Of a stretch of 64,000 bases of DNA, positions 12,877 to 61,550 are shown piece by piece. The position numbers and the translations under genes were made by a program. A model generated the notes under the pieces. That model was not told where the DNA came from, ran no database searches, and was given only the letters and a program-made list of their open reading frames with translations. How positions within the stretch are numbered: position 1 is the first letter of the stretch; each line of letters starts with the position of its first letter. The stretch covers positions 62,001 through 126,000 of the forward strand of contig NIVC01000709.1 of assembly GCA_002269645.1 (NCBI GenBank). Direction: 5' to 3'. The stretch comes from Macrostomum lignano. Lineage: Eukaryota.

Positions 12877-15293
12877 ATGCGCTCTCCCTCACCTCTCCCG
12901 TTCCAGCCGTCCCCCTGCTGCAGCGGCTGCAGCTGCAGCCCCCGCCGCCTGCTGTACGCCCTGTTCTGCCTGTCCTCCTGGGGCGACCGCATGTGGACTT
13001 TCGCGGTCGGCGTCTACCTGGTGCAGATCTCGCCGGCTCGCTGTCGCTCACGGCGGTGTACGGCCTCTCCTGCAGCCTCGGCGTGTTCTCGCTGGGCTCG
13101 GCCATCGGCAACCTCATCGACCGGTCGCCCCGGCTGCTGGCCGCTCGCACCAGCCTGGTGATGCAGAACGGCCTCGTCAGCGTGTGCGCTGTGATCGTCT
13201 GCCTGATTCTCTCCGGTCTGGTGACCGCTCAGGCCGCTGCCGCCTTCGAGGCCGCCAAGGCGCTGGTGGTGGCGACGGCCCTGCTGGCTCAGCTGGCCAG
13301 CGTAGCGTCGAAGATCTGCGTCTCCAAGGACTGGATTGTCGCCATCTGCGGCTCGGACAAAGAGCTGTTAGCGACGGCCACCGCGCACCTGCGCCGCATC
13401 GACCTGTCCTGCCAGGTGCTGGCGCCGCTGCTATTCGGCATGGTGACCACCTTCGTGTCGCCGCTGGCCTCGGCCATCACCGTGGCCTGCTGGAACCTCG
13501 TCTCCATGTGCGTCGAGTGGACGCTGCTGGGCCACATCTACGCCTCGGTGCCGCGGCTGGCTGAGAAAAACCAGCCGGCTGAAGCGGCTCAGCAGGACGC
13601 CGACGTTCTTGTTGAGGACGCCAATGATGACGCTGCACCCGCCGCCGCCCCCGCCGCCGCACCCGCCGCCGATTCCCGTTTGCGGACCCGAATAGTTGGT
13701 CAAATTCGCGACCAGGTGGCGGGCTGGCAGCTGTACTTCCGGCAGCCCGTGTTCTGCGCCGGCCTGGCCCTGTCCAGCCTGTACCTGACCGTGCTGGGCT
13801 TCGACAATGTCACCACTGGCTACGTGTACTCACAGGCGGTGCCAGCGGCCGTGCTGTCCGGCTGCCTGGCCGTGTCGGCCGTATTCGGCCTGCTGGGCAC
13901 CCTGCTGTTCCCGGCGCTGCGGTCCCGCTTCGGCCTGCTGAGCTCCGGCCAGACCGGTTTCGTTCTGCAGGCGCTCAGCCTCCTGCCTTGCGTGCTGTCC
14001 GTCTTCGCGCCAGGCAGCCCCTTCGACCTGACGGCCGCGCCGCCCGTCCAGCAGATCAACGTTACGCAGCCGCAGTTCACCGAGCTGATGCTGTTCACCT
14101 TCGATGTCGGAGGCGCCGCTGGCGGCAACGGCACCGACGGCAGCGGTGGCGATCGACCGTCTTCCTACGCGTCGGTGGCGCTGCTGCTGGCGGGCATCGT
14201 GGTGTCGCGCACGGGGCTGTGGCTGGCCGACCTCAGCATCACCCAGCTGTTCCTGGAGACCGTGCCGGAGCGGGAGCGTGGCCGGGTGTACGGAGTTCAG
14301 GAGAGCCTCAACCAGCTGCTGGACCTGGCCAAGTTCGGCCTGGTGGCCGCCCTGCCGCTGGTCACCCAGTTCGGCCTGCTGGTCTGCCTCTCCTATGCGG
14401 CCATCTGCTGCGGCGGCTGTCTTCACCTGCTGCAGGTGAGCCTTGCTGCCGTCACCACTGCTGCCAACCTCATCTCAGATCATTAAGGTCACATTGCAGG
14501 GGTTCTGCAATGGCTCCCTTCCAGGGCCGGGCTTGTGTACAAGAAAACTGGTCGTGGGTTGTCCCCAAGGCACAGAGTCTACTGTACATGCCTGAAGCTT
14601 AGAATTCAGGGCCGCTGCACACCCCGTGTACATCATGAGCAAACACAGCCTAAAAAGCATTGAAATGGCACGGCTCGACTCATTGATTTTATGAATCTAT
14701 TTTATCAATCTTAGCTGGCTGTGTAACAATATTGTGTAGCAGAGATGATAAAAAAGATTCATAACTTTTCTGATTTTCAGGTACAGGAAATGTACGTAGA
14801 ATAAAAAAAATAGACATAGAATTCTAATTTTCTAAACGAAAGCTTTGAATGTGAATAGAGCTATGAGAAAGGCACAACATATCAAAAGGTGAACATTGGG
14901 TCTGCCTCTTATCTAAAGCAGTAACCATTTTTTGCTGAAAGAATGAAAACTTTTTATCTCGGTAGGTATTTAAAATAGTATTTTTGCTAAAATCGATCGC
15001 ATACCTAGATAGATAGATAGATACCGACAGACCATTTTTAGTATATGGACTAGATATTTCGGCGAAATCCAGCCTCTTAAAGCTGTCCTTGGCAACCCCG
15101 CACCCGAACCCACGATTCTCCGCAGATATTCCGAAGCCGCAGTCGCAGCCGCACGGATTCCGCTGACAGCCGCAGCCTGACGAAGAGGCTCTTGACGGCC
15201 TGCTGCCCGAGCTCCGCCGCGTCTCTGCCGGTGAACCCGCCGCTGCAGTCGCCGATGTACCTGGACACGATCCCGACTGACGGGGCAGTCTAG
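12877..15293 (+). CDS. SLC40A1: Ferroportin (SLC40A1/FPN1 family iron exporter), 2 exons, with a 1-nt frameshift near 13033
   Basis: LYALFCLSSWGDRMWTFAVGVYL, SLTAVYGL...AIGNLIDRSPRL, RRIDLSCQVLAPL, LYLTVLGFD and SRTGLWLADLSITQLFLE are ferroportin motifs. Adding one C at 13033-34 joins the 12877 and 12993 frames. Donor cag|gtgagc at 14435 and acceptor ccgcag| at 15125 give an in-phase last exon 15126-15293 (this exon is inferred). Confidence 0.9.
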
Positions 15294-17716: not shown

Positions 17717-20700
17717 ATGTCAGGAATTGGTTCCACTTTGCTAAAAAAGATGGGATGGAAAGAAGGTAAGTTTTGTAAATGAAGTGAGCATTTATGTTAT
17801 AATTTATTCATTTTTATTTGGTTTTATTTTTACTTATACCAAATATAGGTCTATTTGGCAAATATCAGGGTTTTTTTAAATTCATTTTTGGCGATTTGAA
17901 AGCAAGAAAACTATAAGGCAAAATCCAAAAACGTGGGATAAAAGTAAAAACAGAAATGGTAAAACAAATCTGCGGACATTCAATAGAAAGTAATATATCT
18001 AAAAAAGGGTTTTTGATAGATAGATAGGTCTTAAAAAAATAGTTCTAGATAAAAACTATTGTTTTCATGCTTTATATTGTTGAATAAATAAGAAATAACC
18101 ACAAAAAAAGCATTTTAAAAGTCTGAGTTGACCAATTTGCAATTTTTTGTTTCACTTTTTTCATTATTAAACAATTAATTTTTTAAGACTTGTAGGCCTT
18201 AGAGAAGGCTAATTTTTTTACTACTTACGAAACAAAAAGTAATTTGTGTTTTACTTTTTATTCTATTTAAAAAGATGAAGTATTTATAAGGATTTCAAAG
18301 TTTTTCTAAAACCACATAAACTCACAAAAATTCATACTAATTTAAAGTGCAAAGTTTGCTAGCAAACATCTTTCTCTAAAAGTAAATATGAGTATATTGC
18401 TGATTCCTTGTTGCAAAATAATCTTTAAGTTGTTTTCTTTCATTTAAATATTAACTTGCATAGTATTAGTATTTGTAACATGCCTATATTTAGACTTAAA
18501 AAATTTTGGGTAAAAAATGGTACCACAAAATGTGAACCTAGCATCCAAATCAAATGCTTCCTATATGCTTATTAAGTGACAAAGAACAATGAAATTACAC
18601 TAAAACATGTATCATTGCGGCGTGTATGCAGGAAAAAAATAATTTTCCAAATTGCTTCAGTAGAAGCTGAGTAAAATGCAATTTTCCAATCCTTACGGCA
18701 ATTTGTATGTTTAAATAATAGGCCTAAACATACATGCGCAACCTCCAAAATTTGGTCGGCCGTGCGACTTAGTTTTAACAAAAATGCGACGTAGTTTTCG
18801 GCCAAAAATGCGACTTACATGAAAAAACCTGAAAGCAAAATTAACGCAACTTTGGGTAAACGGCAGGAGTAACTATGACTGTCTTTATTAAGGCAAAATG
18901 CTTCGTCAGCTACTTAATACTACTTTGGTATTTATTTGGGTGGGCATTTTTGCAACTTACCTTGGTTGGCCGCCAAATCAGTCGTCCATATCGGCCAACT
19001 ATTGTGCATGTATGGTTTTGACTCTTGTCATTCCTTATCGTATTTGTACCCCATGTGGCACTAGAACAGTACACTTGACACGGAGTGTTTTAGGCATGAT
19101 TGTACAGTGTAAGGTTGCAAAAGTGGGGAGTGGCAGATATACATATGTATATATAGCTGTATGAGTATGATGGCACAAGCTAAGGCTAAGTCAATGCATG
19201 CAGCGATAAAAGCAGTCTGTAAAGCCAAATAGTGAAAGTTAACCTTAACTTATAGCACCTTGGCAGCCTATGCTCTCTGCCTGCATCTGATACGAGCATA
19301 TAACTAAACTGCCAAGGCAATTGGTTGTATTTACACTTACTTTCTGTACATGAATTGGTAAAGGTAAGGGCTTTTAAATGTTTTATTTATATAGTAATAC
19401 TCATAAATCAATTTTATTTTATCACCAAAATCATATACTCGACTTAATCTTTCACAGAATGATGTGCAGCCTTAGTTGTCTTTGCCTACTGATTCTAAGT
19501 GGCATCCTAGCTATCAATGGTATTCTAGCTGAGAGTGAGTGCTCAATTGTTATAAATGAGTTAAATACTGATGAGCCTAATATTGGATCTCAAGAATTTT
19601 CAGAGTTCATTGAGCTAAAGAAAGTTTGTTCTACAACTGCAATGCTATTAGGATCAGTGCCAGTGAGACTCCATGATTTTCTTCTGATTGGAGTTCAAGA
19701 ATATAGCGGCGATTTTAGACGACCTGTGGTTTCATTTTCTGCTGACTTCTATCGGTCCTCGGGCTTCAAAACGGACAGCAGTTTCTTTGTTATTGCATCA
19801 AAAGGGAAGCAGGAAGCAGCAGATATGTTTTTTACCGATACATCTATTGGGTATCAGGGAAAAACTAGACATGGGCTGCCAAGTTCCGCTCCTAGTAGAT
19901 CATCGCAGTCATCCATCATTGATTTTTTCAAGTCTGCTAGTAAGACAATTCCAACAGAACCAAATGCATTAATGAATGGGAATGGTAAAAGTGCTATGGC
20001 CATTATTCTCTTGTATCAACGAGACTTTTCTAGATCAGAATCGGACAGTTCAAGTTCCACAACTGCCAGTAGCATTGGAAAACTGCGACTAGCTAAAATG
20101 CATGCAACACAAAGAAGACCTGTTTATGAAGATAAAATTATCATTGATAACTCATTAGCTGAAATTATTAGGAACAATAACAGGTGCACATTTTTGAGTC
20201 CATTTATCGTAGGCTAAGAGACAAGCCCAACTACATCTTAAAGCCAGCAAGAGAATGGGATGAACTTGGTCATGAGGACTATTCAATAAACCGGTGCCCT
20301 GAATCCAGCAGTGAGTTACGAAAGCCTTTGCTTTTTACAAGGTGGAAACTTGGACAGTTGACTCCAGGTAGATAAAATGACTGCTCAGGTGCTCATTGGA
20401 TTTTAGAGGACAATATTGAAGCCATCATAAATACACCTTCAAGAGAAGCATGTACATTGGCAGACTCAGCATTAGCATCTGCTTCATCAGCAACAGAAAG
20501 AATCGAAATGCGACTAGCTCCTGCTCCAGCTCCATGTTCTGAAAGCTCACACCGTAGTGAATTGGCCAGGTCCTATGAATTTTCAGAGCAAATAGCAGCT
20601 AATCGAGATCATGCTGTTCAAACTGCTGCTGCAGAAAATTCTAATTTTTGCTCTGCTGCAAATGTACAGGAAAGAAGAGAGTTGTTGGAGAATGACCAGC

Positions 20701-23700
20701 AAACAAGCAAACTACAAGTGGAAATTATTAGGCAAGTAAATATTCAAAGACAATCAACGAAACGATCACTTTGCCAAAGTCCTATTGTTGATTTAGATTC
20801 GAGCGACTCAAGGGGTTCAGGTGATGTTGAAATAGTACAAGTAAATACTGCAGAAGCAGGGCCATCGCAAAGAAAAATACCATGCATAAGCACATCTGCA
20901 GACGCATGTCTAGCCACTTCAGCATCAAAGCCCTCGTCTTCCTCTATGATGGGCGAAAATATTGAAGTTTTCCCTAAAAAGGACTGGGAGGATACATCTG
21001 GTTTTCGAGAGGAGTGGTTACATTCTTTGGAGATGCACCAGTCACAGTAAGTAAATGGAAACTGACGAACTGTAAATTAATGTATAGTGTATTGTGTATT
21101 GCACTTATTAGCATATTGCTTTTAGATACTCACAAATAGTCCAAATCCCAAAATATTCTCTAATTTGACCATTGCAGATCATTTTCAAGAAAATTTGTGT
21201 CACAAGAAATGAAGACATGGTTTCAATATGTTCAAAACACCGAAGATCTATCAAGATCTGGAATACAATGTTGGATCTGCAGAAAATTTTTGAATGCACA
21301 TAAGAAAAAGGAGACAAATCTAGAGAGCCAACGTAAGTTAACTTTTGCAACAGAACAAGGCTACATTCCCAAAGGTCATGCAAAAGATAGCGTACGAAGA
21401 AAACTACAGGAACATTCATCAAATACACTTCACAGTGACGCCATAAAGTGGATGAAGGAAAAACATACTTCAGTTCTTGCAAAGCAACTCAAACAGATGA
21501 ATGAGGCCGCTAGACTAGCTAAAACTAAACGAGATGAAATAACAGCCCGAGTTTTGACAACAGTTTTTTCGCCAAAGTCAAATCTAATATTCCATTTAGT
21601 GCTCATCCAAATATGATTGATTTACAAGTAAAAAATGGGTTGGATATAGGGAGCCATCATAAGCATCGCAAAAGTGCCGCAGCAATGGTGGAATCAATCA
21701 GTAATACAATGCATCGGACATTTGTGAATTACATTAAAAGTGCTGACAACCTTCCGATTTCTATTGTACTAGATACAACGTCTGATATTCATTCAAACAG
21801 CTACGTCATGATATACTTCAGAGTTCTTGAAAACAGCCAACCTTTGATGTTTTTTTATCGGTTTAAACGTCTGACTGAAGTAGAGACTGGACGAAGCATT
21901 TATGAACTTCTCATCCGTTTATTTTCGGATGACAAGCTAGAAATGAAATCAAACGAAGGCTATGGGGGTGACAACTGATGGTGCATCCGTAATGACAGGA
22001 AGTCGAGTGGGATTAATAAGTCAACTGAGGCCTTGGGCTAGCAAACAATTTTTTCAGCACCATTGTGCAGCGCATAAGTTAGAACTTTCAATCTATCATG
22101 CCTTTGAAATCTTCCCATTTATGCAACATCTCGATAAGAATATAAATTCTCTACACAAATTTTATATGAGCCACGCTGTTAAACGTAAGGCATCTTTGGC
22201 ACAAACTTCGGAAGCACTCAACTTGGTTTTCTATGAATTAAAAAGAATATATCGTATCAGGTGGGTTGCATCGGAAGTGTCTGCTCTTGATGTGATTCGA
22301 AAGTCATACTACTTGCTTCTGACAAATTTAGAAAATATCAAATCACCTTCCTCAGGCTTTGATGACGAAAGTAAAGCAACTGCCTCTGGATTATTGAAAA
22401 CATTGCAAAATGTCCGGTATTATTCATTACATCTATTTCTCATGGACATTCTAAAATTACTGGAATTTGAGTCCTTGCAGTTTCAAAGAGCCAAGGGTAC
22501 ATTTATTGGCTTGCAAGAACGCCACACTAACCTTATCCATTCACTAGAAACCTTAAAAACGAACAATGGTCCTTGCATTGTGGACTTTTTGGCTTCCTGC
22601 AAGTGTCGTCGAGTTTTGGGAACTGCAGATGGATATCCGCAGCTGGAATACCATTCAGGATGTCACACAAGAGACCTATCTTATTCTAACTTTGCTTGTC
22701 CTTCCGGCCCTGGAAGCAGCGATCCAACAGAGAGGTTTGAGTTGAAGCAACCAGGTTCTGCTGCAGACAGATCTCTAAGAAATAGATTATTTGATGCTAG
22801 TGGACGTGGCAGTGTTGTTGACATGGGAGCTTATCCAGCACTGGATGAGATTCGCAGTCGAATCATTGATAGCATAATTGATCAGCTGCGTAATTATTTT
22901 CCTGAGGATGACTACTCAATATTTAATGTGCTCAACCCAGTGTTATTGCCTAATGCTGAAACATTACATACTGTCTTTACATACAGTTCGAGAATCATAC
23001 CTCTTGCTAGACGGTTTGGAATGGAAGATGACAGCTCTGAATCTGAAACAGAGGACCATCTTTCTGATTCAGACTCTAGAGATGCAGATGCTTCAGAATG
23101 CGCTACAGAAAGGACAATCTCTGGTCAGTTCGGTCTACTCCTAAAAAGTTTGATCACTTTGCATAGTGTTGACTTCTGTGCCTACAAAGGCAAAGGTCCG
23201 GTGAAATTTTGGAGTCACTTTCTAGAGACAAGAACTGTTGAATGGCTGCCCAGAATAAAGAATCTAATTATGGTTGTGTTAACTTTGCCAATATCATCAG
23301 CTGAGGCTAAAAGAGGGTTTTCTATCTATAAGCACATTGCCTATGACAGGAGAACACGCTTGGCACCAAAAACATTGGAGCATCTACTACGGATTCGAAT
23401 AAATGGGCCTCCGCTGATGAAATTTAAGCCGGATATTTATGTCAATGATTGGCTGAAAAAACACTGGCGTTCTGATGCTCCTGGAGGTCTACGGCAAAAA
23501 GAATCCAACGTAGACGAGGAAAATAAAGATTCTGATTCTGATTTGCTAAGTGGACTATTTTAAAAGTTTTTTATCAGTTTTAATCTGCTACAATTTTAAT
23601 CAATTATTACAATGGTACATGCATAATCATTAAGACTACAGTTCTTCTAAGTTCATATATAAGACCGTTAGAATCTTGCAGTTTTAATTTGCTAATTAAA

Positions 23701-26700
23701 TATTATTAAAAGTATGATTTGCAATTGTAATAGGGCTGAAAAATTACTGCTTATAAGTTATTCTATCCCTATTTCTATTCCTTAGCCATTTCTGGCTTCG
23801 TAATTCTTAATTTTTCAAATTGATGCGTTAATGCACACGTAGCCTACACCCTAGTAAGTGATACATTAAATTCATCCTAAACTAATCCTATCCTAATAAT
23901 CCTAAAGATGCTCTGCGACTTAACTCAGTCCTGCTGCGACTTACCTCGGCCCTGCTGCGACTTACTCGGTCCTGCTGCGACTTAGCTCGCCCTCGGTGCG
24001 ACTTAGCTCTCGCTCGGTGCGACTTAGCTCGCCCTCGGTGCGACTTAGCTTGGTCCTGCTGCGACTTAGTGCGACTTAGCTCTCGCTCGGTGCGACTTAG
24101 TTCGCCCTCGGTGCGACTTAGCTCGGTCCTGCTGCGACTTAGCTCGCCCTCGGTGCGACTTAGCTCGGTCCTGCTGCGACTTAGTGCGACTTAGCTCTCG
24201 CTCGGTGCGACTTATTTTGCCCTTGGTGCGACTTAGCTCGCCCTTAGTGTGACTTAGCTCTCGCTCGGTGCGACTTAGTTCGCCCTCGATGCGACTTAGC
24301 TCGGTCCTGCTGCGACTTAGCTTGCCCTCGGTGCGACTTAGCTCGCCCTCGGTGCGACTTACCTTGTCTTCAGTGCTGCAACTTACAGCACTTACAACTC
24401 TTTTTGTGTTTTTCTCTTTCTCTTTGCTCCCTTTTTCTCGTTTTTTCCTTTTCCTTTCCCCTTTTTCGTCTTTTGTTTTTTCGTTTTTTTTGGCGGTTAA
24501 TCAATTTTGCGACTTACTTGGTTGGCCGCCAAATCGGTCGGCCGGATCGGCCGACTCGGCCGACTGTTGCGCATGTATGGGCCTAAACTTACATTGAATA
24601 CAATTTATTGCAAACAAACTCTACAAAATATATGTTGTCAAGAGTAATGAAAGTGATAAATAAATAAACCCTTAAAAATATTGTTAAATATATTGTAGAA
24701 TTATAGTGTAACATTATAAGATAGTTAAAGTTAATAAAATACATTATTATAGCTTTTCTATCATTTTCATTAGAGTCATTTTAGGTCATAATTAAACTTA
24801 CCATTTTAACAAATCATTTTATTAAAAATAAAGTTTAGGAAAATTGCATTTTACTCAGCTTCTATTGAAGCATTTTGGAAAATTCTTTTTCCTGCATACA
24901 CACTGCATCCGCAATAATACATATTTTAGTGTAATTTCATTGTTCTTTGTTGCCTTATAAGCCTACAAGAAGCATTTGATTTGGATGCTGGGTTCATATT
25001 TTGTGGTACCATTTTCCCCCAATTTTTAAATCTAAATATAGGTAAATTACATACACTAATACTATGCAAGTTAATATTTAAATGAAAGAAAACAACTTGA
25101 AGATTATTTTGCAACAAAGAATTAGCAGTATATTTACTTTTAGAAAAGGATGTTTGCTGGCAAACTTTGCACTTTAAATAAGTATGAATCTTTGCAAGTT
25201 AAGTGGTTTTAGAGAAACTCAGAAATCCTTTAAAATACTTCAGCTTTTTGAATAAAATAAAAAGTAAAACACAGATTACTTTCTGTTTTGTAAGTAGTAA
25301 AATATGAGCCTTCTTAAATGTCTAAAAGTCTTAAAAACTTTTGTTTAATTATGAAAAAAGTGAAACAAAAATGTGAATCAGTTAACTTAGACTTTTAAAA
25401 TGCTTTTTTTGTGGTTTTTACTCATTTATTAAATAATGCAAAGCATAAAAACAATAGTTTTTATCCAGAAATTTTTTAAAGACTTAAAGTCCAAATTGAC
25501 CATTATGATTTTTTGTATCCCTAGGCTCATTTCTATCCTCTGAGATGATCTTGCTACTGTCACCAAAAATGTCAAAAGGCCAAACTTCTCTCTTTAAATC
25601 TCAATTGCTACTACCAAAGTAGTGTTCTGCTGTAACTATGGCTATGGCTATGGGATCTTATGGCAAATATGGTAAAATAAGTGCCTATGGCAACTATGGA
25701 TATGCCTATAGTAGCAATGTTGGGCACCAGTCCATTAATAAGTATTAATAAGCATTAAGATTTTTCATTAAAGTTAATAGACTGCCATTAATGGATTAAT
25801 AGACTAATGGATTAACAAATTTGTGTTAATAATTTTGTAAGTTAATAACAAATTCATTGTTAATGTTAATGGCAATGTTAATGACCAGAGATGCAAAGAA
25901 AGAACAAAAATATAAGTCTAAAAAGAAGTTACAACATTATGAATATGTTTGAATTTACCTACATGCCTGATTAATCTCTTTAATAATGCATTAAAATTGT
26001 GAACTTTATTGCTTGTGTGTAAGCATCAATTGCTTTTATTCACTTCTTTCCCAATCTTTTGTAACTTTCTGCTGTACATCTGCTAATGCTACTGAAACAG
26101 CCTTCCTATTTGTATTTTATTATTAAGTATTTAGCTTTCAAGTTTCAAATAAGAAAGTTAATTATTTTACAATATGTTTACTTTTGGTAGTATTATATAT
26201 ACAAGTTTTTTAACTTATTATTTATCACTTTTAAGCTTTTAAATTGCTTAGATGATCTTTGTGTTTCACTAAAAAGATGGAAAAGCAAAGACAGTACATT
26301 GTAAAGTCTGTTTTGTAAAAAAGTGTTAGATTTCTGTATTTTCTGTGTTAACTTTAATGGATTAATGCTTATTAACAATTATAAATTAACTTTTAGTTAC
26401 CTTAACAAAATTAAGAGTTAATAAGTTAGGATTTTTTTGTTTTAATGCTAACACTTTTGCCATTAATAGAAGTTAAGATTTTCATTAATGGTGGTTGTGC
26501 AGGGCCCCTCCCAATTTTTTTATAAAATAGTCACCATTTAGTCAATTTGAATTCACGCCAAAACTAAGAAACATATTTTGTTTTAATACTCGTATTTTCT
26601 ATAATATTTTGCACTAACAAATTTTTGTTTAAAACTGTAGCAAATTTTAGTATAAATAGAAGCAAATTTGGCAGAGGAAGAACCAACCTCGCGCACCGCG

Positions 26701-37010: not shown

Positions 37011-40000
37011 TGTTGTAAAGTGAGTTTACTCACTGGGTTGTTTTGCTAGTCGGTGTTTGGGGGTCAAGGGGATCCGATGTACATGCGCGCTCTGTTTGTA
37101 TATGTACATGCGTTCTCGAGTAAATATAAGAATAGCTCCACCCTTTGGGTGAGGGTTTGAATTTTGTTTGTTGGACTAAACCTGACTGGCTTGTCTCTCG
37201 CTCACCACATTTTGGCGTCGCGCGGAGAAATCAATTGATTTGGGCCAGCGTGATTCAGCACAAGCGCGAACTCTAAAATCTGCCAAGTCATGAGCAGCAC
37301 AGAAGGTGCAAATGCAAGTGCAATTGGCGACCCACAGCGAGGGTCCCAACAAGCAGCAGCCCAACAGTCAAGCAGAGATGCAGCCAACAGAATGAGTGTC
37401 AACATTTCGCCACCGCAGCCGTTTCTGCCAGCCGCTGGAGCACCGCTGATTGAATGGAACCGATGGAAAGCAATGTTCAGCAATTACCTGCTAGCATCGG
37501 GAGCCAGCGATCTGCCGGAGCAAAGAAAACAAGCGTTGCTCATTCACTGTTTGGGTGCAGAGGGACAAAACATCTACATGTCTCTACAGGCCAGCAGCAA
37601 TCAGGAGGAAGGAGAGCAACCGCCATCAACAGTTGATGACACGCTGAAGCTCCTAGACATGCACTTCGGACCCAAAGTCAACGTAGTTGCTGAGAGGCAC
37701 AGATTCCGACAGAGAGCTCAGCGACCGGGCGAAAAGATCAGCGACTTCGTTGCCGCGCTGCGAAACCTGGCTTCGAACTGCGACTTCAAGACCTTCCAGG
37801 AGGAGATGCTGCGTGACCAGCTCGTCGAGAAAGTGCTCAGCAACCACATCAGGGAGCGACTGCTTATGGAGCCGGAGCTGACCTTGGCGACAGCTGTGCA
37901 GTTGGCGGAGCGACTGGAAACTGGACTGCTGGAGGCCCAGGCCATCAAGGGAGGCAGCCACACAGACCCAAACAGCTCGTGTGGAGTCCAGCAGATCAGC
38001 AAGGCCAAGAACAGTGGAGCAGCGGCAAGACAGCACGAGGCACTGAAGTCGACAGCCGACGGCCGGAGCTGCGGCTACTGTGGCTCAGCGGCGCATGTCG
38101 GTGGACAGACCTGCCCAGCAAAGGGGCAGAAGTGCAAGTCCTGCGGCAAGCGCGGGCACTTCGCCAGAGTCTGCAGGAGCGGCAACCGAGTGCGACAGCT
38201 TCAGGATGAGTACTCCATCTGCACTGTGTCGACAGCTGCGGCAGCAAGCAAGCACTGCGAAGTGCTGCTGAACGGGAGGCCTGTCAAGCTGCTCGTTGAC
38301 TCCGGTTCGCGAGTCTCCATCATCACCAAGACGACGTACAATAGACTTCTGTCCAACGTGCCCCTGCAGGCGTCATCACGGAAGCTGGTCGCTTTCAACG
38401 GCAGCAAGATCGGCGTGCTTGGTGATATCCTGACCTCGGTGCAACTCAAGGACAAAGTAGTGCCTTACGTCAACCTTAGCGTGGTTAATACCGGATCTGA
38501 CATCCTGGGGTGCGACCTCATGGATCAGCTGGGACTGCGGATCGTCACTGCAGACGGTGAGCGAGTGCAGACAGTCGGCACCAGAGCCCTGCCTGACTGG
38601 ATCCCAGGCCGGTTCGACCAGTTGACTCAGGGACTCGGACACATCAAAGGATTTCAGCACAGGCCGCGAGTCAACCCCGCGGTGCAACCGACTGCTCAAC
38701 CGTTGCGCAGAGTGCCGCTCAGCCTAAGAGATTCGGTTCAAAAGGAGATCGACCAGCTGCTGCAGCAAGGCATCATCGAGGAGGTCGACGCCTCAGACTG
38801 GGTGTCAAACCTAGTCGTGGTGCCAAAGGCGAACGGCTCGATCCGGATCTGCAACGACCTGAGAGGCCCAAACAAGAGCATCATACCGGACAGATACCCA
38901 CTTCCGACCTTTGAGGAGCTCTCCGCCGAGTTTGCCGGGTCACGATGCTTCTCCAAGTTGGACCTGAATTCGTCTTACCTGCAACTGGAGTTGTCTGAGG
39001 ACTGCAGAAATCTGACCACGTTCGTGACGGAGCGAGGCCTATATCGATATCGGAGGGTGTGCTTCGGCCTGAGTAGTGCACCGGCTGCGTTCCAGAAGGT
39101 GATGGCTAAGATCCTCAGTGGCATCAAAGGCGCAGTGCACTTTATTGACGACATCGTAGTGCACGCGGCATCAAGAGAAGAGCACGACAAGCGCCTGTTC
39201 AAGGTGCTGCAAGCTCTGATGACGCACAACGTGACTATCAATACGGCCAAGTGCACCTGGCGCCAGGACAAGGTCAACTTCCTAGGCTATGAGCTGAGCG
39301 CTTCTGGAGTCCGCCCGTTGCAGTCACACGTCGAAGCTATCGAGAAGGTACAGCCGCCAACGAACACCAAGGAAGTGGCTGCGTTTCTAGGCGTCGTGAA
39401 GTACTTTGGCAACTTCATTCCCAGCCTCTCCAGCACGGCGGAGCCCCTCATGAAACTGCTGAGGAAGGACGAGTCGTGGAAGTGGACCAGTGAGTGCCAG
39501 CAGGCTTTTGAGCAGCTGAAGGCAGGAGTGTGCAAGCCACCTTGCCTCAAGTTTTTCGACGCAGATCAGCCGATCATCGTCAGCTGCGACAGCTCAGCAT
39601 CAGCTCTTGGTGCGATGCTCCTCCAGCAAGACTCCGACGGCCAGTGGCGCCCGGTTGCCTTTGCGAGCCGAACTCTGAGTGCTACGGAGCGCCGCTACTC
39701 GGCGAGCGAGAGGGAAGCCCTGGCCTGCATCTTCGCCTGTGAGCGCTGGAACTTCTTCCTTTACGGCCGACGGTTCGAGCTCCACACCGATCACCAGGCT
39801 CTCACCACGCTACTGTCATCATCTGGGAGCGGACACCGGCCACTCAGACTGCATCGCTGGGCTGATCGTTTGTTAAACTACTCCTTCACCGTCAAGTACG
39901 TCCCGGGTGCCAAGAACATCGTGCCCGACTTTCTGTCGCGCTGCCAGGACACGGCCGAGCCGACGGAAGGCGATGAAACAGACGGTCTGGAAGTCCAAAG

Positions 40001-41623
40001 AGTGCTCCTGGCCGAGGCGCTGACCGTGGTCACCGAGGACGAGCTGGCGGAGGCAACGTCAAAGGACGAGCTCCTGGCACGAGTCGCAGAGTTCACAGTT
40101 TCCGGTTGGCCAGACAAGAAAAAGCTCGATGAGCGCCTGCTGCCCTACTGGAGTGTCAGGAACGAGCTGACTGTTTGGAGCAACGGCAGGTGCTTGGCCA
40201 TGGGAACTCGTGCCGTCATACCGGAAGAACTGCGCCAGCGAGTGCTCGACTTAGCGCATCAAGGTCACAAGGGAGTCAGCAGGACCAAGCATCACTGCCG
40301 AGACACCGCCTGGTGGCCCAAAATGGACAGCGACATCGAGAGGTTCGTCAGCAGCTGCTCTGCGTGCATCATCAGTGAGAAGAGCTTCAAGCCGCATCGG
40401 ACAGTGCTGACCCCGACCAAGTGGCCGAAGGAACCGTGGACAGAGCTGCAGATCGACTTGTTCGGAGAACTGCACGAGGGTGCACCACAGAACTGCCGTT
40501 TCATACTCGGTGTACATGACCTGCATTCAAAGTGGCCCGAACTGGTCTGCCTCTCTTCAGCGACGTCTGCGACTATCATCAAGAGTCTCACGGCGCTGTT
40601 TTGTCGCTGGGGCATTCCGCGCGTAATCACCACCGATGGAGGACCCCAGTTCATCTCCCAGGAGTTCAACGACTTCCTAAAGGCGTACGGCATCAATCAT
40701 CGTCAGACTCCGTTCTACCACCCTCAAGGAAATTCCGGAGTGGAGCGCCTGAACCGCGTAGTCAAAGAGGGCTTGAAGAGCCACCTTCAAGACGGCTACT
40801 CGTTCCTGGAAGCGGTGCAGTCCATCCTGTGGGCGTACCGATCGACACCGCATGCGCTGACCGGCGTGACGCCAGCGGAGCTGATGCTCGGCCGCAAGAT
40901 CACCACGCCGCTGTGGACGCTGCAGCCGAAGCGAGCGACTCGAGAGCACCCACTGGCCGATCAGATCCAGGAGCGGCAAAGACGGCAGTTCAAGCGGCTC
41001 AACAGATCCCGGCAGCCGCCGCGCCAATTCCGGGTCGGCGACCTGGTGCGAGTGCGATCTCCGCGGATGCGAGGCAAGCTGCAGAGCCACGTGTCACCAC
41101 CTCTACGGGTCAGCGACATCATCAGCCCGACGATCGTCAGGTTAGAGGACGGCTCAAGGTGGCACACCAGCCTCTGTATGCCTCATGCGGAGCCCGAGGG
41201 TGCCAGCACGACTTCGGCAACGGCAATGCCGCCACAGCCGCCAGTGGCTGCAGAGCCGGCAGCGCCAGAAGGCCCGACGGACCCGCCGCCGGCGACCGCT
41301 GAGGCCGACGCGGAGCTGCGGCGCAGTACGCGACTGCGGGCACCACCGTTGTGGTACGGCCAGGTCGTGACGCATTGATTGACAGCTGTGAAGGGAATTA
41401 GTGACTGTTAAGGAGGAGGGTGAATGTTGTAAAGTGAGTTTACTCACTGGGTTGTTTTGCTAGTCGGTGTTTGGGGGTCAAGGGGATCCGATGTACATGC
41501 GCGCTCTGTTTGTATATGTACATGCGTTCTCGAGTAAATATAAGAATAGCTCCACCCTTTGGGTGAGGGTTTGAATTTTGTTTGTTGGACTAAACCTGAC
41601 TGGCTTGTCTCTCGCTCACCACA
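37011..41623 (+). mobile_element. Intact Ty3/Gypsy LTR retrotransposon (4613 bp)
   Basis: 199-bp LTRs (37011-37209 and 41425-41623; TG...CA) with no difference seen by eye. 5-bp TSD ACCCG, PBS-like tggcg after the 5' LTR, PPT aaggaggagggtgaa. Confidence 0.98.
37290..41378 (+). CDS. Gag-Pol polyprotein (Gag-CCHC, protease, RT, RNase H, integrase), 1362 aa
   Basis: CKSCGKRGHFARVC zinc knuckle, LLVDSGS protease, FIDDIVV RT, VSCDSS...ELHTDHQAL RNase H, HQGH...CSAC and ITTDGGPQF...VERLNR integrase; PR-RT-RH-IN order. Confidence 0.98.
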   Translation: MSSTEGANASAIGDPQRGSQQAAAQQSSRDAANRMSVNISPPQPFLPAAGAPLIEWNRWKAMFSNYLLASGASDLPEQRKQALLIHCLGAEGQNIYMSLQASSNQEEGEQPPSTVDDTLKLLDMHFGPKVNVVAERHRFRQRAQRPGEKISDFVAALRNLASNCDFKTFQEEMLRDQLVEKVLSNHIRERLLMEPELTLATAVQLAERLETGLLEAQAIKGGSHTDPNSSCGVQQISKAKNSGAAARQHEALKSTADGRSCGYCGSAAHVGGQTCPAKGQKCKSCGKRGHFARVCRSGNRVRQLQDEYSICTVSTAAAASKHCEVLLNGRPVKLLVDSGSRVSIITKTTYNRLLSNVPLQASSRKLVAFNGSKIGVLGDILTSVQLKDKVVPYVNLSVVNTGSDILGCDLMDQLGLRIVTADGERVQTVGTRALPDWIPGRFDQLTQGLGHIKGFQHRPRVNPAVQPTAQPLRRVPLSLRDSVQKEIDQLLQQGIIEEVDASDWVSNLVVVPKANGSIRICNDLRGPNKSIIPDRYPLPTFEELSAEFAGSRCFSKLDLNSSYLQLELSEDCRNLTTFVTERGLYRYRRVCFGLSSAPAAFQKVMAKILSGIKGAVHFIDDIVVHAASREEHDKRLFKVLQALMTHNVTINTAKCTWRQDKVNFLGYELSASGVRPLQSHVEAIEKVQPPTNTKEVAAFLGVVKYFGNFIPSLSSTAEPLMKLLRKDESWKWTSECQQAFEQLKAGVCKPPCLKFFDADQPIIVSCDSSASALGAMLLQQDSDGQWRPVAFASRTLSATERRYSASEREALACIFACERWNFFLYGRRFELHTDHQALTTLLSSSGSGHRPLRLHRWADRLLNYSFTVKYVPGAKNIVPDFLSRCQDTAEPTEGDETDGLEVQRVLLAEALTVVTEDELAEATSKDELLARVAEFTVSGWPDKKKLDERLLPYWSVRNELTVWSNGRCLAMGTRAVIPEELRQRVLDLAHQGHKGVSRTKHHCRDTAWWPKMDSDIERFVSSCSACIISEKSFKPHRTVLTPTKWPKEPWTELQIDLFGELHEGAPQNCRFILGVHDLHSKWPELVCLSSATSATIIKSLTALFCRWGIPRVITTDGGPQFISQEFNDFLKAYGINHRQTPFYHPQGNSGVERLNRVVKEGLKSHLQDGYSFLEAVQSILWAYRSTPHALTGVTPAELMLGRKITTPLWTLQPKRATREHPLADQIQERQRRQFKRLNRSRQPPRQFRVGDLVRVRSPRMRGKLQSHVSPPLRVSDIISPTIVRLEDGSRWHTSLCMPHAEPEGASTTSATAMPPQPPVAAEPAAPEGPTDPPPATAEADAELRRSTRLRAPPLWYGQVVTH

Positions 41624-60392: not shown

Positions 60393-61550
60393 TTAAATGT
60401 TTCCTGGCTGAGACTTGAACTTATTGGGAGCCAGGAGGCTCTGTAAGTTACGTTGCCGTGTAAAAGCGGGCAGAATGCGGGAGCCTGGTTTATTTTGTAG
60501 CTTCTCAAAGTTTTTAGCAATCTCGTTGGCAAGCCAGACCGTAGATGGGTGAAAAGGAAGGACCATTGGGATGGGTCGGAGAAGATGATTGTCAACCCTG
60601 ATGTTCGTGCCTGGCGGTTTGTCAGTCCCTAGTTTTTTAATCCAGATTTCTTCCCTTAGTTCGATTTTGTTGTTATTAGGAACATGTTCGATAGCAATGG
60701 AGACAAAGTTTGCAATCGAGTGACTGGGGGTGAGAAAGTGCTCAGACCCCGAAGTCACGACCCTCCTGTTAATATTTGACCTGTGCTGGTTCATTCTATC
60801 TCTCATTGTTCTTCTAGTCATACCTACATAGAGGATTTTCCCAGGGTGGCACTGGTTGCAGGAGATGCCATATATGATGTTCATGGAGCCACAGGACAGG
60901 CTCTGAGAGATTAAAAAACCAGAAGCCGGTTTCAGTCCCTGGGCGGAGAGAGCAGGCGGTGAGTGGGTGCAGCATTTGCAGCGGGATGACCCACAGGGAT
61001 GGAACCCTTTGGGAAGCAGACCCAGATTGGTCGTTGGTCCTGCAGTCCAGTTCATAAGTATGAGGACATCCTTTTTGCAGTTTCTAAGAAAAATCTTCGA
61101 GTAGCCTAATTGCTTGAGTTCCGATTTTAAAGAATTGAAAGCATCGTTGAAAGACTTGTAGTCATCACAGATACGAGCGTACCGAAGGATTTGGGATTTT
61201 ACTACCCCCTTGAAGGTGTGTGACGGATGGAAGGACTGTCGGTGCAACAATCTATGAGTGTCTGTTTCTTTTGAAAACAGTTGTGTTGTGAAGCGGTTTT
61301 CAGCTTTCCTGATGGTCATGTCAAGGAAACTGACCTCAGTTGATGAGGAGCTGACGGTGAGTTTGATGTTGGGGTTGATTGAATTTAGGTGTACAACAAA
61401 TTCTGTCAGAGTTTCAGCCGGGTGGTCCCAGTGAATGAAGATATCATCTATGTACCTAAAATAGATGTTCGGCTTATAAAGAGCAGTTCTCAGGGCAGTT
61501 TCCTCCCAGAGGCTCATGAAGAGACAGGCATAGCTGGGCGCAACTTTCAA
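60393..61550 (-). CDS. PLE reverse transcriptase (C-terminal part) plus GIY-YIG endonuclease
   Basis: APSYACLFM, YFRYIDDIF, FLDMTI, HPSHTFKGVVKSQILRYARIC, Cys linker CGSSRCKCC and NIIYGISC...LYVGMT...RMNQHR. Confidence 0.93.
   Translation of the reverse strand: MKVAPSYACLFMSLWEETALRTALYKPNIYFRYIDDIFIHWDHPAETLTEFVVHLNSINPNIKLTVSSSSTEVSFLDMTIRKAENRFTTQLFSKETDTHRLLHRQSFHPSHTFKGVVKSQILRYARICDDYKSFNDAFNSLKSELKQLGYSKIFLRNCKKDVLILMNWTAGPTTNLGLLPKGFHPCGSSRCKCCTHSPPALSAQGLKPASGFLISQSLSCGSMNIIYGISCNQCHPGKILYVGMTRRTMRDRMNQHRSNINRRVVTSGSEHFLTPSHSIANFVSIAIEHVPNNNKIELREEIWIKKLGTDKPPGTNIRVDNHLLRPIPMVLPFHPSTVWLANEIAKNFEKLQNKPGSRILPAFTRQRNLQSLLAPNKFKSQPGNI

What the first reader, a model, noticed from the sequence alone, without database searches (positions are those of the whole stretch)
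19459..23563. hAT transposase apparently fused to a signal peptide and lamin-tail-like (LTD) extracellular module
Seen: inside the TIR/TSD-bounded element, the gene starts MMCSLSCLCLLILSGILAINGILA-ESECSIVINELNTDEP...SEFIELK, a hydrophobic leader followed by an INE...EFIEL motif. It continues through a Cys-containing segment (SINRCP...KLGQLTPGR*NDCSGAHWILE) and a Ser-rich linker. A clean phase-2 intron (21047-21177) then joins it to the zinc finger and DD(E) core, about 1320 codons once lesions are repaired. Established: hAT transposases are nuclear, and INE..EFIEL is the signature of LTD domains found in secreted proteins. Inference: this family carries an extracellular-type module in its transposase gene. 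It could yield a secreted or ER-targeted product, an alternatively started nuclear form, or a cargo affecting spread or host interaction. This copy is inactive.
Basis: partly seen in the sequence, partly recalled or inferred. Interest (0 to 1): 0.85.

Follow-up and report, generated by a model that had tools for sequence, protein, structure and literature searches.

The report
hAT transposase with captured secretory LTD
A dead copy of a flatworm "cut-and-paste" hAT transposon belongs to a large, apparently undescribed family whose transposase starts with a secretion-type leader and a cell-surface-type lamin-tail domain, an odd front end for an enzyme that must work on nuclear DNA.

Summary
Window 18729-24579 is a hAT element with a perfect 14-bp TIR (CATACATGCGCAAC) and an 8-bp TSD (GGCCTAAA). 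A 98.9%-identical copy sits elsewhere in Macrostomum lignano with its own TSD. Its two-exon gene (19459-21046, 21178-23563) reads: hydrophobic leader, about 300-aa INE..EFIEL module, acidic/Ser-rich linker, zinc finger, Buster-type hAT transposase.

The fusion is not an artefact. Relatives at about 30% identity carry the whole architecture as single uninterrupted ORFs of 1000-1250 aa. A profile of the module finds 414 protein clusters.

Pfam's LTD model does not hit the module directly. The module's profile does hit Pfam-positive multi-LTD type-I surface proteins, and it aligns over its full length to their roughly 200-aa unit (hhalign 99.2%, E 1e-19), sharing its invariant residues, including two cysteines. 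In those proteins a signal peptide directly precedes the first LTD unit, so the transposon most likely captured that 5' end. 61 of 76 members keep a hydrophobic leader, against 1.8% of control windows.

This copy is dead and was mobilised in trans. What the leader does is untested. Only sequence rules were applied, not a trained signal-peptide predictor. My best guess is ER diversion that limits nuclear transposase, with the LTD as an accessory binding module. I found no description in the searchable literature.

The parts
18721..18728 (.). Left target-site duplication, GGCCTAAA
   Evidence: It is identical to the 8 bp at 24580-24587. The L006 copy has CTTGGGTT and L007 has AATTTAAA at their own sites.
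18729..18742 (+). Left terminal inverted repeat, CATACATGCGCAAC
   Evidence: It is a perfect 14-bp inverse of 24566-24579. The same TIR occurs in the 69%-identity subfamily, L007. The L006 alignment starts exactly here.
18743..18830 (+). Left subterminal region with three TGCGAC(T/G)TA motifs, candidate transposase-binding sites
   Evidence: Within the window, exact matches to the motif are confined to the element's subtermini.
18945..19014 (+). Internal second copy of the right terminus. With it, 18729-19014 looks like a 286-bp miniature element joined to the gene-bearing part.
   Evidence: Homology to the L003 subfamily begins at 19015.
19459..19530 (+). Start codon and 24-aa hydrophobic leader, MMCSLSCLCLLILSGILAINGILA (signal-peptide-like)
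   Evidence: An equivalent leader is present in 61 of 76 family members, against 1.8% of control windows. dN/dS against L003 is 0.13, from few sites.
19531..20405 (+). LTD-type module, from ESECSIVINELNTDEP..EFIEL to SINRCP..TPGR*NDCSGAHWILE. It is broken here by a 39-bp deletion after 20175, a 1-bp deletion near 20190, and a TAA at 20373-20375.
   Evidence: hhalign against LTD units gives 99.2% probability, E 1e-19. The profile hits Pfam-LTD proteins. The invariant residues are shared. Lesions are. dN/dS is 0.22.
20406..20984 (+). Variable Ser/acid-rich linker with a degraded basic patch (QRKI here, QRKR in P0001). It has a 42-bp indel at 20632 relative to L003.
20985..21046 (+). Conserved WEDTSxF..W motif and the end of exon 1
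   Evidence: The motif is conserved across the family.
21047..21177 (+). Phase-2 intron, GTAAGT...TTGCAG
   Evidence: Sequence. Spacing is identical to the intron-less homologs P0003 and P0006. L007 has an intron at the same site. Retention would stop translation at once (TAA at 21045-21047).
21178..23563 (+). Exon 2, containing the zinc finger (about 21269-21433, CxxC...HxxxxxH), the Buster-type RNase-H-like core, and the hAT dimerisation region (23246-23395). Lesions: a frameshift near 21565, 1-bp deletions at 21942 and 21963, and Glu->Lys at 23309-23311 in AEA(E>K)RGFS.
   Evidence: Pfam Dimer_Tnp_hAT, E 3.3e-6. PF27073 FAM200-ZBED5_RNase-like on the near-identical P0004. Lesions.
23913..24361 (+). 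Right subterminal tandem array, about 22 units of 21 bp, each carrying TGCGACTTA on the + strand
   Evidence: The window and L006 differ by 42 bp of array.
24566..24579 (-). Right terminal inverted repeat
24580..24587 (.). Right target-site duplication, GGCCTAAA

Best explanation
SHOWN
- Window 18729-24579 is a non-autonomous, recently trans-mobilised copy of a Buster-clade hAT DNA transposon of Macrostomum lignano or a very close relative.
- In the family's intact form, the transposase is one polypeptide. It runs: N-terminal hydrophobic leader; one extended LTD unit of about 270-330 aa; variable acidic/Ser-rich linker, often with a basic patch; WEDTSxF..W motif; CxxC..H..H zinc finger; RNase-H-like hAT core; hAT dimerisation region.
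- The leader-plus-LTD front end matches the 5' end of metazoan type-I cell-surface multi-LTD proteins, in which a signal peptide is followed directly by the first LTD unit.

INFERRED (origin)
- A hAT ancestor captured that 5' exon once. The capture was kept through deep diversification: 414 clusters at 50% identity, members below 30% identical, and dN/dS of about 0.2 on the module. It is therefore functional for the transposon.

INFERRED (mechanism, about 40-45% of my belief)
- The leader still acts as an ER signal sequence, so most nascent transposase is diverted co-translationally into the secretory pathway.
- Only the fraction that escapes translocation reaches the nucleus, via the basic patch.
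- There the zinc finger reads the subterminal TGCGACTTA repeats, and the LTD acts as an accessory DNA-, chromatin- or protein-binding module beside the catalytic core.
- The leader would thus throttle the nuclear transposase dose, or make it condition-dependent.

This window's copy makes no working protein.
For: Mobility:
- The TIR and TSD are perfect.
- An independent copy has the same ends and a different TSD.
- A 69% subfamily has the same TIR and a third TSD.

hAT identity:
- PF05699 scores above its cut-off.
- PF27073 hits P0004, P0005 and P0006.

Fusion is real:
- Single uninterrupted ORFs: P0006, P0019, P0055, P0115, P0017.
- P0003 runs from the module into the zinc finger without an intron.

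Family size:
- 414 clusters at E<=1e-3 and 212 at E<=1e-10, out of 1.84 billion representatives.

LTD homology:
- The profile hits proteins that Pfam scores as LTD, at E 1e-25 to 1e-101.
- hhalign gives 99.2% probability, E 1.1e-19, over module columns 23-302 against unit columns 7-201.
- The same invariant residues occur in both: Glu (INE), Glu (EFIEL), Asp, Cys, Asn and Cys.

Donor architecture:
- Signal peptide directly before the first LTD unit, with a C-terminal TM anchor.

Leader:
- 61 of 76 members have KD(11)>=2.0 in the 35 aa before the INE motif, against 1.8% of 1460 control windows.

Selection:
- dN/dS is 0.13 for the leader, 0.22 for the LTD and 0.43 for the linker.

Basic patch:
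- At least 4 of 5 K/R in 8 of 28 members, against 0 of 112 control windows.

Subterminal motif:
- Exact TGCGACTTA occurs only in the element's subtermini.

Precedent for signal + LTD + DNA-cleaving enzyme:
- ExeM loses in-vitro activity when its LTD is deleted (PMC6085458).
- LTD has been proposed as a DNA-binding add-on of secreted DNases (PMC4486849).

Copy is dead and moved in trans:
- Lesions are shared with L006 at a different locus.
Against: - No trained signal-peptide predictor and no experiment. ER targeting is inferred only.
- An efficient signal peptide would put the whole transposase in the ER lumen, away from DNA. The throttle idea needs an inefficiency that has not been shown.
- About 15 of 76 members lack an obvious leader yet keep the LTD and its cysteines. 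The leader is therefore dispensable in some lineages, or those N-termini are miscalled.
- Pfam LTD does not hit the module directly.
- Foldseek gives only weak generic Ig-like hits.
- The basic patch is not universal.
- TIRs and TSDs could not be found around two full-length relatives from other organisms. Mobility is therefore demonstrated only in Macrostomum.
- The dN/dS values rest on few substitutions (21 synonymous and 17 nonsynonymous in the module).
Confidence: 0.6

Rival explanations
1. The LTD works in the nucleus as a DNA-, chromatin- or lamina-binding or oligomerisation module. The hydrophobic leader is a tolerated relic of the capture, or a hydrophobic tether with no ER role. The protein is an ordinary nuclear transposase with an extra domain.
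For: - Lamin-type LTDs are nuclear and have been associated with DNA binding (PMC4486849).
- About 20% of members lack a leader but keep the LTD.
- The most conserved positions are all in the LTD, not the leader.
- A basic NLS-like patch is common.
Against: - A useless N-terminal hydrophobic stretch should decay, or the start codon should move, over the divergence seen here. Instead 80% keep one at the same distance from the INE motif, with no sequence conservation. That is the signature of selection for hydrophobicity.
- Leader dN/dS is 0.13 (few sites).
- The module keeps the two invariant cysteines of the extracellular unit in 68 of 68 members.
Confidence: 0.3
2. The transposase, or an exon-1-only product made by intron retention, truly travels the secretory pathway. 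It acts outside the producing cell, for example in soma-to-germline or between-organism spread, or in interaction with the host surface.
For: - The complete secretory-type front end is conserved.
- The putative disulfide cysteines are invariant.
- In Macrostomum-type copies a retained intron stops translation immediately after exon 1. This would yield a leader-LTD-linker protein without the transposase.
Against: - Most relatives have no intron and make only the full-length protein.
- No route is known by which a lumenal or secreted transposase would reach chromosomal DNA.
- No ER-retention signal or second TM segment was seen when reading the sequences.
- No distribution data were obtained to test for horizontal transfer.
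Confidence: 0.08
3. The apparent fusion is an artefact. On this view an LTD gene or gene fragment merely lies next to, or was trapped inside, this one element, and repairing the lesions created a false long ORF.
For: - This copy needs several repairs to read through.
- Annotated M. lignano models (P0004, P0005) contain only the transposase part.
Against: - Uninterrupted ORFs of 1000-1250 aa with the same order of parts occur in many unrelated assemblies.
- The junction is colinear with the intron-less P0003 and P0006.
- The short NCBI models are explained by the same frameshifts that the window carries.
Confidence: 0.02

Closest known systems
Buster/Charlie-type hAT transposons and their domesticated relatives (ZBED5, FAM200A/B, KIAA1586-like)
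   Same: - 8-bp TSD and short TIRs.
- Zinc finger upstream of an RNase-H-like core that matches PF27073 FAM200-ZBED5_RNase-like.
- C-terminal hAT dimerisation region, PF05699.
   Different: - No DUF4371 (PF14291) was detected. The nearest named protein, P0008 (KIAA1586-like), is only 22% identical.
- The distinctive difference is the N-terminal leader plus LTD unit and the WEDTSxF motif. As far as I know and as far as my paper searches show, these are not described for any hAT.
Metazoan type-I cell-surface multi-LTD proteins (P0033, P0051, P0070, P0134 with an Fz domain, P0137)
   Same: - Signal peptide immediately followed by (I/V)INE(L/I)NxDxP...EF(I/V)EL.
- The same roughly 200-aa unit, ending in S(I/L)(S/N)RC...TPGxxNxC.
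- The same invariant Glu, Glu, Asp, Cys, Asn and Cys.
   Different: - Those proteins have 3-13 tandem units, a C-terminal TM anchor and no transposase.
- The transposon keeps one unit, with family-specific insertions and a third conserved Cys (NxC.FF, 93%).
- The transposon's unit falls below Pfam's LTD threshold.
Bacterial secreted LTD-nucleases (ExeM of Shewanella; LTD-DNases of halophiles)
   Same: The same three-part logic: N-terminal signal sequence, then an LTD, then a DNA-cleaving catalytic domain. LTD deletion lowers in-vitro nuclease activity (PMC6085458; PMC4486849).
   Different: - They have unrelated catalytic folds (EEP or DNase I, against RNase H-like).
- They are truly extracellular enzymes acting on extracellular DNA.
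- No homology beyond the LTD was tested. This is an analogy, not membership.
Transposases that gained host domains by exon capture (THAP on the P element; SCAN/KRAB on ZBED9-type hAT derivatives)
   Same: An accessory N-terminal domain is joined to a DDE/RNase-H-like transposase and kept across a family. This comparison rests on my own knowledge and was not tested here.
   Different: Those additions are nuclear DNA- or protein-binding domains. Here the captured piece comes from a secretory or cell-surface protein and includes its targeting leader.

Membership tests
hAT superfamily DNA transposon | 8-bp target-site duplication | tested here: met
   There are three independent insertions with perfect 8-bp TSDs: GGCCTAAA in the window, CTTGGGTT in L006 and AATTTAAA in L007.
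hAT superfamily DNA transposon | Short terminal inverted repeats that bound the mobile unit | tested here: met
   The 14-bp TIR CATACATGCGCAAC is perfect. The inter-locus alignment starts and stops exactly at the TIRs.
hAT superfamily DNA transposon | C-terminal hAT dimerisation region (PF05699) | tested here: met
   E 3.3e-6, 27.2 bits against a cut-off of 21.4, on the repaired window protein. It also hits P0004 and P0006.
hAT superfamily DNA transposon | RNase-H-like core with a catalytic D, D, E triad | tested here: inconclusive
   PF27073 (FAM200-ZBED5_RNase-like) is precomputed for P0004, P0005 and P0006, but the local Pfam scans listed only PF05699. The conserved Glu of the AEAERGFS motif is Lys in this copy and in P0004. 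It is Glu in L007, P0006, P0007 and P0019. That this Glu is the catalytic one is from my memory of Hermes and was not tested.
Lamin tail domain (Pfam LTD, PF00932) | Match to the Pfam LTD model above its gathering score | tested here: not met
   There is no LTD hit at E<=1 on the window module. There is none at E<=10 on P0001, P0002, P0006 or the L001 ORF.
Lamin tail domain (Pfam LTD, PF00932) | Profile-level homology to bona fide LTD sequences | tested here: met
   The module profile finds proteins that Pfam scores as LTD at E 1e-25 to 1e-101. hhalign between the module and their units gives 99.2% probability, E 1.1e-19, 191 aligned columns. The units were picked from the profile's own hits, so selection is partly circular. 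Their LTD status is independent of that selection.
Lamin tail domain (Pfam LTD, PF00932) | Ig-like beta-sandwich fold resembling solved lamin tail domains | tested here: inconclusive
   In AF2 model 2 (mean pLDDT 83.4; module mostly above 90) the module is mainly beta-strand, with several short helices. The best Foldseek PDB hits are antibody-type sandwiches at E>=0.011. Mouse lamin Ig domain 1UFG is rank 50 at E 0.17.
Cleavable ER signal peptide | N-terminal hydrophobic h-region of about 8-20 residues close to the start | tested here: met
   The window leader is MMCSLSCLCLLILSGILAINGILA. 61 of 76 family members score KD(11)>=2.0, against 1.8% of control windows.
Cleavable ER signal peptide | Call by a trained predictor (SignalP-type), including a -3/-1 cleavage site | not testable with these tools
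   No predictor was available. By eye, many leaders end in small residues, for example ILA|E, VFA|Q, SWA|E, VSA|E and VNA|D.
Cleavable ER signal peptide | Demonstrated translocation or cleavage | not testable with these tools
   This needs an expression experiment.

The most novel reading that the evidence does not exclude
The leader is a working ER signal sequence on a working transposase. The family's enzyme would then be made at the ER, and its access to the genome would be gated by how efficiently it is translocated, for example released to the nucleus under ER stress. In the extreme version it is exported and acts beyond the producing cell. Either way this would be a mode of transposase control or spread not known for any DNA transposon.
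Probability: 0.25. Interest if true: 0.9.

Novelty: new variant of a known kind. Interest (0 to 1): 0.72.

Why it matters
- DNA transposases are assumed to be plain nuclear enzymes. Here a large, old and in at least one animal recently mobile hAT family has kept the targeting leader and one domain of a cell-surface protein at the front of its transposase.
- That poses a concrete, testable question: does compartmental routing regulate transposition?
- It is also a clear example of exon capture from a secretory gene by a transposase.
- It gives the poorly understood LTD a second, independent pairing with a DNA-cleaving enzyme, after the bacterial LTD-nucleases. This supports a nucleic-acid-related role for the domain.
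- On the practical side, it defines a profile that recognises several hundred currently unannotated proteins.
- It also explains the truncated 'hypothetical protein' models in the M. lignano annotation.

Tried and rejected
- Pfam scans of the module. These covered the window, P0001, P0002, P0006 and the L001 ORF, and found no family, LTD included.
- PDB sequence searches. The module profile gave only a weak FGF1 similarity (E 1.3) over DMIIYxRS..NxCxFFE, which I treat as chance. P0006 gave no hit.
- AF2 with 11 sequences. The model was poor (pLDDT 61.5) and Foldseek was uninformative.
- AF2 with 68 sequences. The model was good, but Foldseek still gave no significant PDB match.
- Exact-sequence look-up of the window's 533-aa ORF. 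It is not on record.
- Cluster look-up for names or taxa of ten full-length relatives. None was informative; one carried only the name 'hypothetical protein'. The taxonomic spread remains unknown beyond Macrostomum.
- TIR/TSD search around two full-length relatives, L008 and L009. Nothing convincing was found.
- Cys covariation test. I asked whether the Cys before INE pairs with the NxC Cys. There is no covariation (47/16/3/2), so no disulfide inference was drawn for that pair.
- Long inverted repeat as the element's TIRs. I first considered 18030-18694 / 24831-25486 and rejected it. There is no TSD, and it is a separate repeat family into which the hAT inserted.
- Literature searches. These covered hAT or transposase with 'lamin tail domain', 'LTD domain' and 'signal peptide'. 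Nothing relevant was found.

Full report
**What is at the coordinates.** The + strand from 19459 reads MMCSLSCLCLLILSGILAINGILA-ESECSIVINELNTDEP...SEFIELK. With a few frame changes it continues to a stop at 23561-23563.
- a hydrophobic leader;
- the INE..EFIEL motif;
- a Cys-bearing stretch (SINRCP...LTPGR*NDCSGAHWILE);
- a Ser/acid-rich linker;
- a GT..AG phase-2 intron at 21047-21177;
- a CxxC...H zinc finger;
- a hAT transposase. Pfam finds the hAT dimerisation region at E 3.3e-6, above its cut-off.

**The element is a real mobile unit.** It is bounded by perfect 14-bp inverted repeats (CATACATGCGCAAC, 18729-18742 and 24566-24579) and a perfect 8-bp duplication, GGCCTAAA.
- A second copy lies in Macrostomum lignano contig NIVC01002610.1 (L006). 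It aligns from exactly 18729 to exactly 24579 at 98.9% identity, in unrelated flanks, with its own 8-bp duplication CTTGGGTT.
- A 69%-identity subfamily copy (L007) has the same TIR and a third duplication, AATTTAAA.
- The nonamer TGCGACTTA occurs exactly only in the element's subtermini, always on the + strand. There are two exact copies plus two one-mismatch copies (18785, 18951) at the left, and about 24 at the right, most of them in a 21-bp tandem array at 23913-24361. These are candidate transposase-binding repeats.
- The near-identical protein P0004 is annotated BOX15_Mlig001790g1, so the window comes from M. lignano or a very close relative.

**This copy is dead, and its lineage moved in trans.** Compared with the intact exon 1 of a sister subfamily (P0001/L003), exon 1 of the window has:
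- a 39-bp in-frame deletion after 20175, which removes NVHDMIIYGRSTQ, including an invariant Asp;
- a 1-bp deletion near 20190;
- TAA at 20373-20375, where relatives have GAA;
- a 42-bp linker indel at 20632.

Exon 2 has a frameshift near 21565, two private 1-bp deletions at 21942 and 21963, and Lys in place of the conserved Glu of AEAERGFS at 23309-23311. L006 shares every lesion except the two private deletions, yet it sits at a different site with its own TSD. The defective sequence therefore transposed after it was broken. That requires transposase from another copy.

**The fusion is real and family-wide.** The repaired N-terminal 529 aa found an intact exon 1 (P0001, 89% identical), a 50% relative with its own leader (P0002), and a 31% relative (P0003) in which the module runs into the zinc finger with no intron. 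The transposase part found P0006, a single 1187-aa ORF at 31% identity with the complete order of parts.

An exhaustive profile search with the module found 414 clusters at E<=1e-3, and 212 at E<=1e-10, among 1.84 billion representatives. These include many uninterrupted ORFs of 1000-1250 aa, such as P0017, P0019, P0055 and P0115. Many hits of 250-400 aa end at the WEDTSxF motif, which suggests first exons with an intron at the Macrostomum position. After splicing, the window has the same 11-residue spacing between HQxQ and K(T/P)W as the intron-less proteins. That supports the proposed intron.

**Is the module an LTD?**
- *Direct test, negative.* Pfam finds nothing in the module, at E<=1 on the window module and at E<=10 on its relatives.
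- *Profile test, positive.* The module's profile also retrieves long proteins with 3-13 repeats, which Pfam scores as LTD at E 1e-25 to 1e-101. Each of their roughly 200-aa units matches first the front and then the end of the module. Profile-profile alignment of the module against 18 such units gives 99.2% probability, E 1.1e-19. It runs from the INE motif to TPGxxNxC, with the module's extra length explained by two insertions.
- *Invariant residues agree.* The invariant columns of 68 family members are Glu (INE), Glu (EFIEL), Asp (xDMxIY), Cys (NRC) and Asn and Cys (NDC). These are the same positions that are invariant in the units.
- *Fold test, inconclusive.* An AF2 model from the 68-sequence alignment is confident (mean pLDDT 83.4; module mostly above 90). 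The module is mainly beta-strand, with several short helices. Foldseek returns only generic Ig-like sandwiches (best E 0.011). A lamin Ig domain is at rank 50.

I conclude that the module is a divergent member of the LTD superfamily. It is closest to the extended unit of animal surface proteins, and it is not a Pfam-level member.

**The leader.** In the 35 residues before the INE motif, 61 of 76 scorable members have an 11-residue window with mean Kyte-Doolittle hydropathy of at least 2.0. Only 1.8% of 1460 control windows from the same proteins reach that. The leaders share no sequence, only their character: a short N-region, often basic; 12-18 hydrophobic residues; then small residues. This is what signal peptides look like. 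No trained predictor was available.

The multi-LTD proteins are type-I surface proteins. They have a signal peptide, then immediately the first LTD unit, and a C-terminal TM anchor with a short basic tail. One also has a Frizzled domain. The transposon's front end is therefore colinear with the 5' end of such a gene.

**Selection.** Between the window lineage and L003, dN/dS is 0.13 for the leader, 0.22 for the LTD module and 0.43 for the linker. Counts are small.

**Origin and mechanism.** The simplest history is a single capture, by a Buster-type hAT, of the first coding exon (signal peptide plus LTD unit 1) of a surface multi-LTD gene. The family-specific insertions are shared by members below 30% identity, which argues for one event.

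Function is inferred, not shown.
- The zinc finger probably reads the TGCGACTTA repeats.
- The LTD is probably an accessory binding module. The only functional precedent I could read is bacterial ExeM, which has a signal sequence, an LTD and a nuclease, and which loses in-vitro activity when the LTD is deleted. LTDs on secreted DNases have been proposed as DNA-binding add-ons.
- A basic patch just upstream of WEDTSxF is frequent but not universal: at least 4 of 5 K/R in 8 of 28 members, against 0 of 112 controls. It suggests nuclear import.
- A conserved secretory leader on a nuclear enzyme is the unexplained part. My preferred reading is that it diverts most of the protein into the ER and so limits or conditions the nuclear dose. 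The main rival is that it has no ER role.
- The two invariant cysteines inherited from the extracellular unit fit folding in the ER but do not prove it. Leader-less members keep them too.

**Comparison and novelty.** By TSD, TIR, dimerisation region and PF27073 core, this is a hAT of the Buster/FAM200/ZBED5 kind. The nearest named protein, a KIAA1586-like fish protein, is only 22% identical. I found no paper linking hAT or any transposase to a lamin tail domain or to a signal peptide on the transposase. The library is incomplete, and Repbase could not be consulted. I rate this a new variant of a known kind.

**Limits.**
- Host range beyond Macrostomum is unknown. The relatives come from unnamed metagenome and read-archive assemblies.
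- Transposon ends were not found for two full-length relatives.
- No intact autonomous Macrostomum copy was recovered.

Noticed in passing
window 18030-18694 and 24831-25486: A pair of roughly 660-bp inverted-repeat arms, 81-97% complementary by segment, flanks the hAT, which sits in the roughly 280-bp spacer. The same repeat family occurs in M. lignano locus L007. There the 69% hAT subfamily has inserted into it at a different point, equivalent to window 18339-18346, which is duplicated as the TSD. This could reflect a target preference of the hAT or simply an abundant foldback-like repeat.
   Followed up: partly
window 18729-19014: The first 286 bp of the element carry both a left TIR and an internal copy of the right terminus (18945-19014, TIR with 2 mismatches), like a miniature derivative. 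Homology to the L003 subfamily begins exactly at 19015. The present left end may therefore have been acquired from an adjacent MITE of the same family.
   Followed up: partly
window 19291-19323 versus L003 427-1099: The sister subfamily has about 670 bp of extra, GC-richer sequence in the upstream region that the window lacks. The last roughly 135 bp before the ATG are about 90% conserved. They contain AAAG|GTAAGG ... TTTCACAG|A, which looks like a 5'-UTR intron ending 1 bp before the start codon.
   Followed up: no
window 23913-24361: The 21-bp tandem array carrying TGCGACTTA differs by 42 bp of array between the window and L006, so the array length is unstable.
   Followed up: partly
window 37290-41378 (+): An uninterrupted 1362-aa ORF has PNMA-like gag, aspartyl protease, RT, RNase H and integrase domains. 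It is an apparently intact Ty3/gypsy-type LTR retrotransposon polyprotein.
   Followed up: no
window 12993-14486 (+): A 497-aa ORF matches Ferroportin1 at E 2e-110. This is a host gene exon in the GC-rich part of the window.
   Followed up: no
window 60393-61550 (-): A 385-aa ORF has a GIY-YIG nuclease domain (E 7e-7), possibly part of a Penelope-like element.
   Followed up: no
C-termini of the window protein, P0004, P0006, P0007 and P0019: The full-length transposases end in a conserved hydrophobic-Phe C-terminus (SGLF, SVLF, TNLF, SRLF) after a basic/acidic tail. None of these five ends in a KDEL-type signal. The meaning is unknown.
   Followed up: no
module segment DMIIYGRS..NRCTFFE.. (window about 20176-20300; P0001 residues about 260-320): There is a weak sequence resemblance to the FGF1 beta-trefoil segment [25 protein letters not shown] (PDB search, E 1.3). 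I judge it to be chance, because the same segment aligns to the LTD unit at high confidence.
   Followed up: yes
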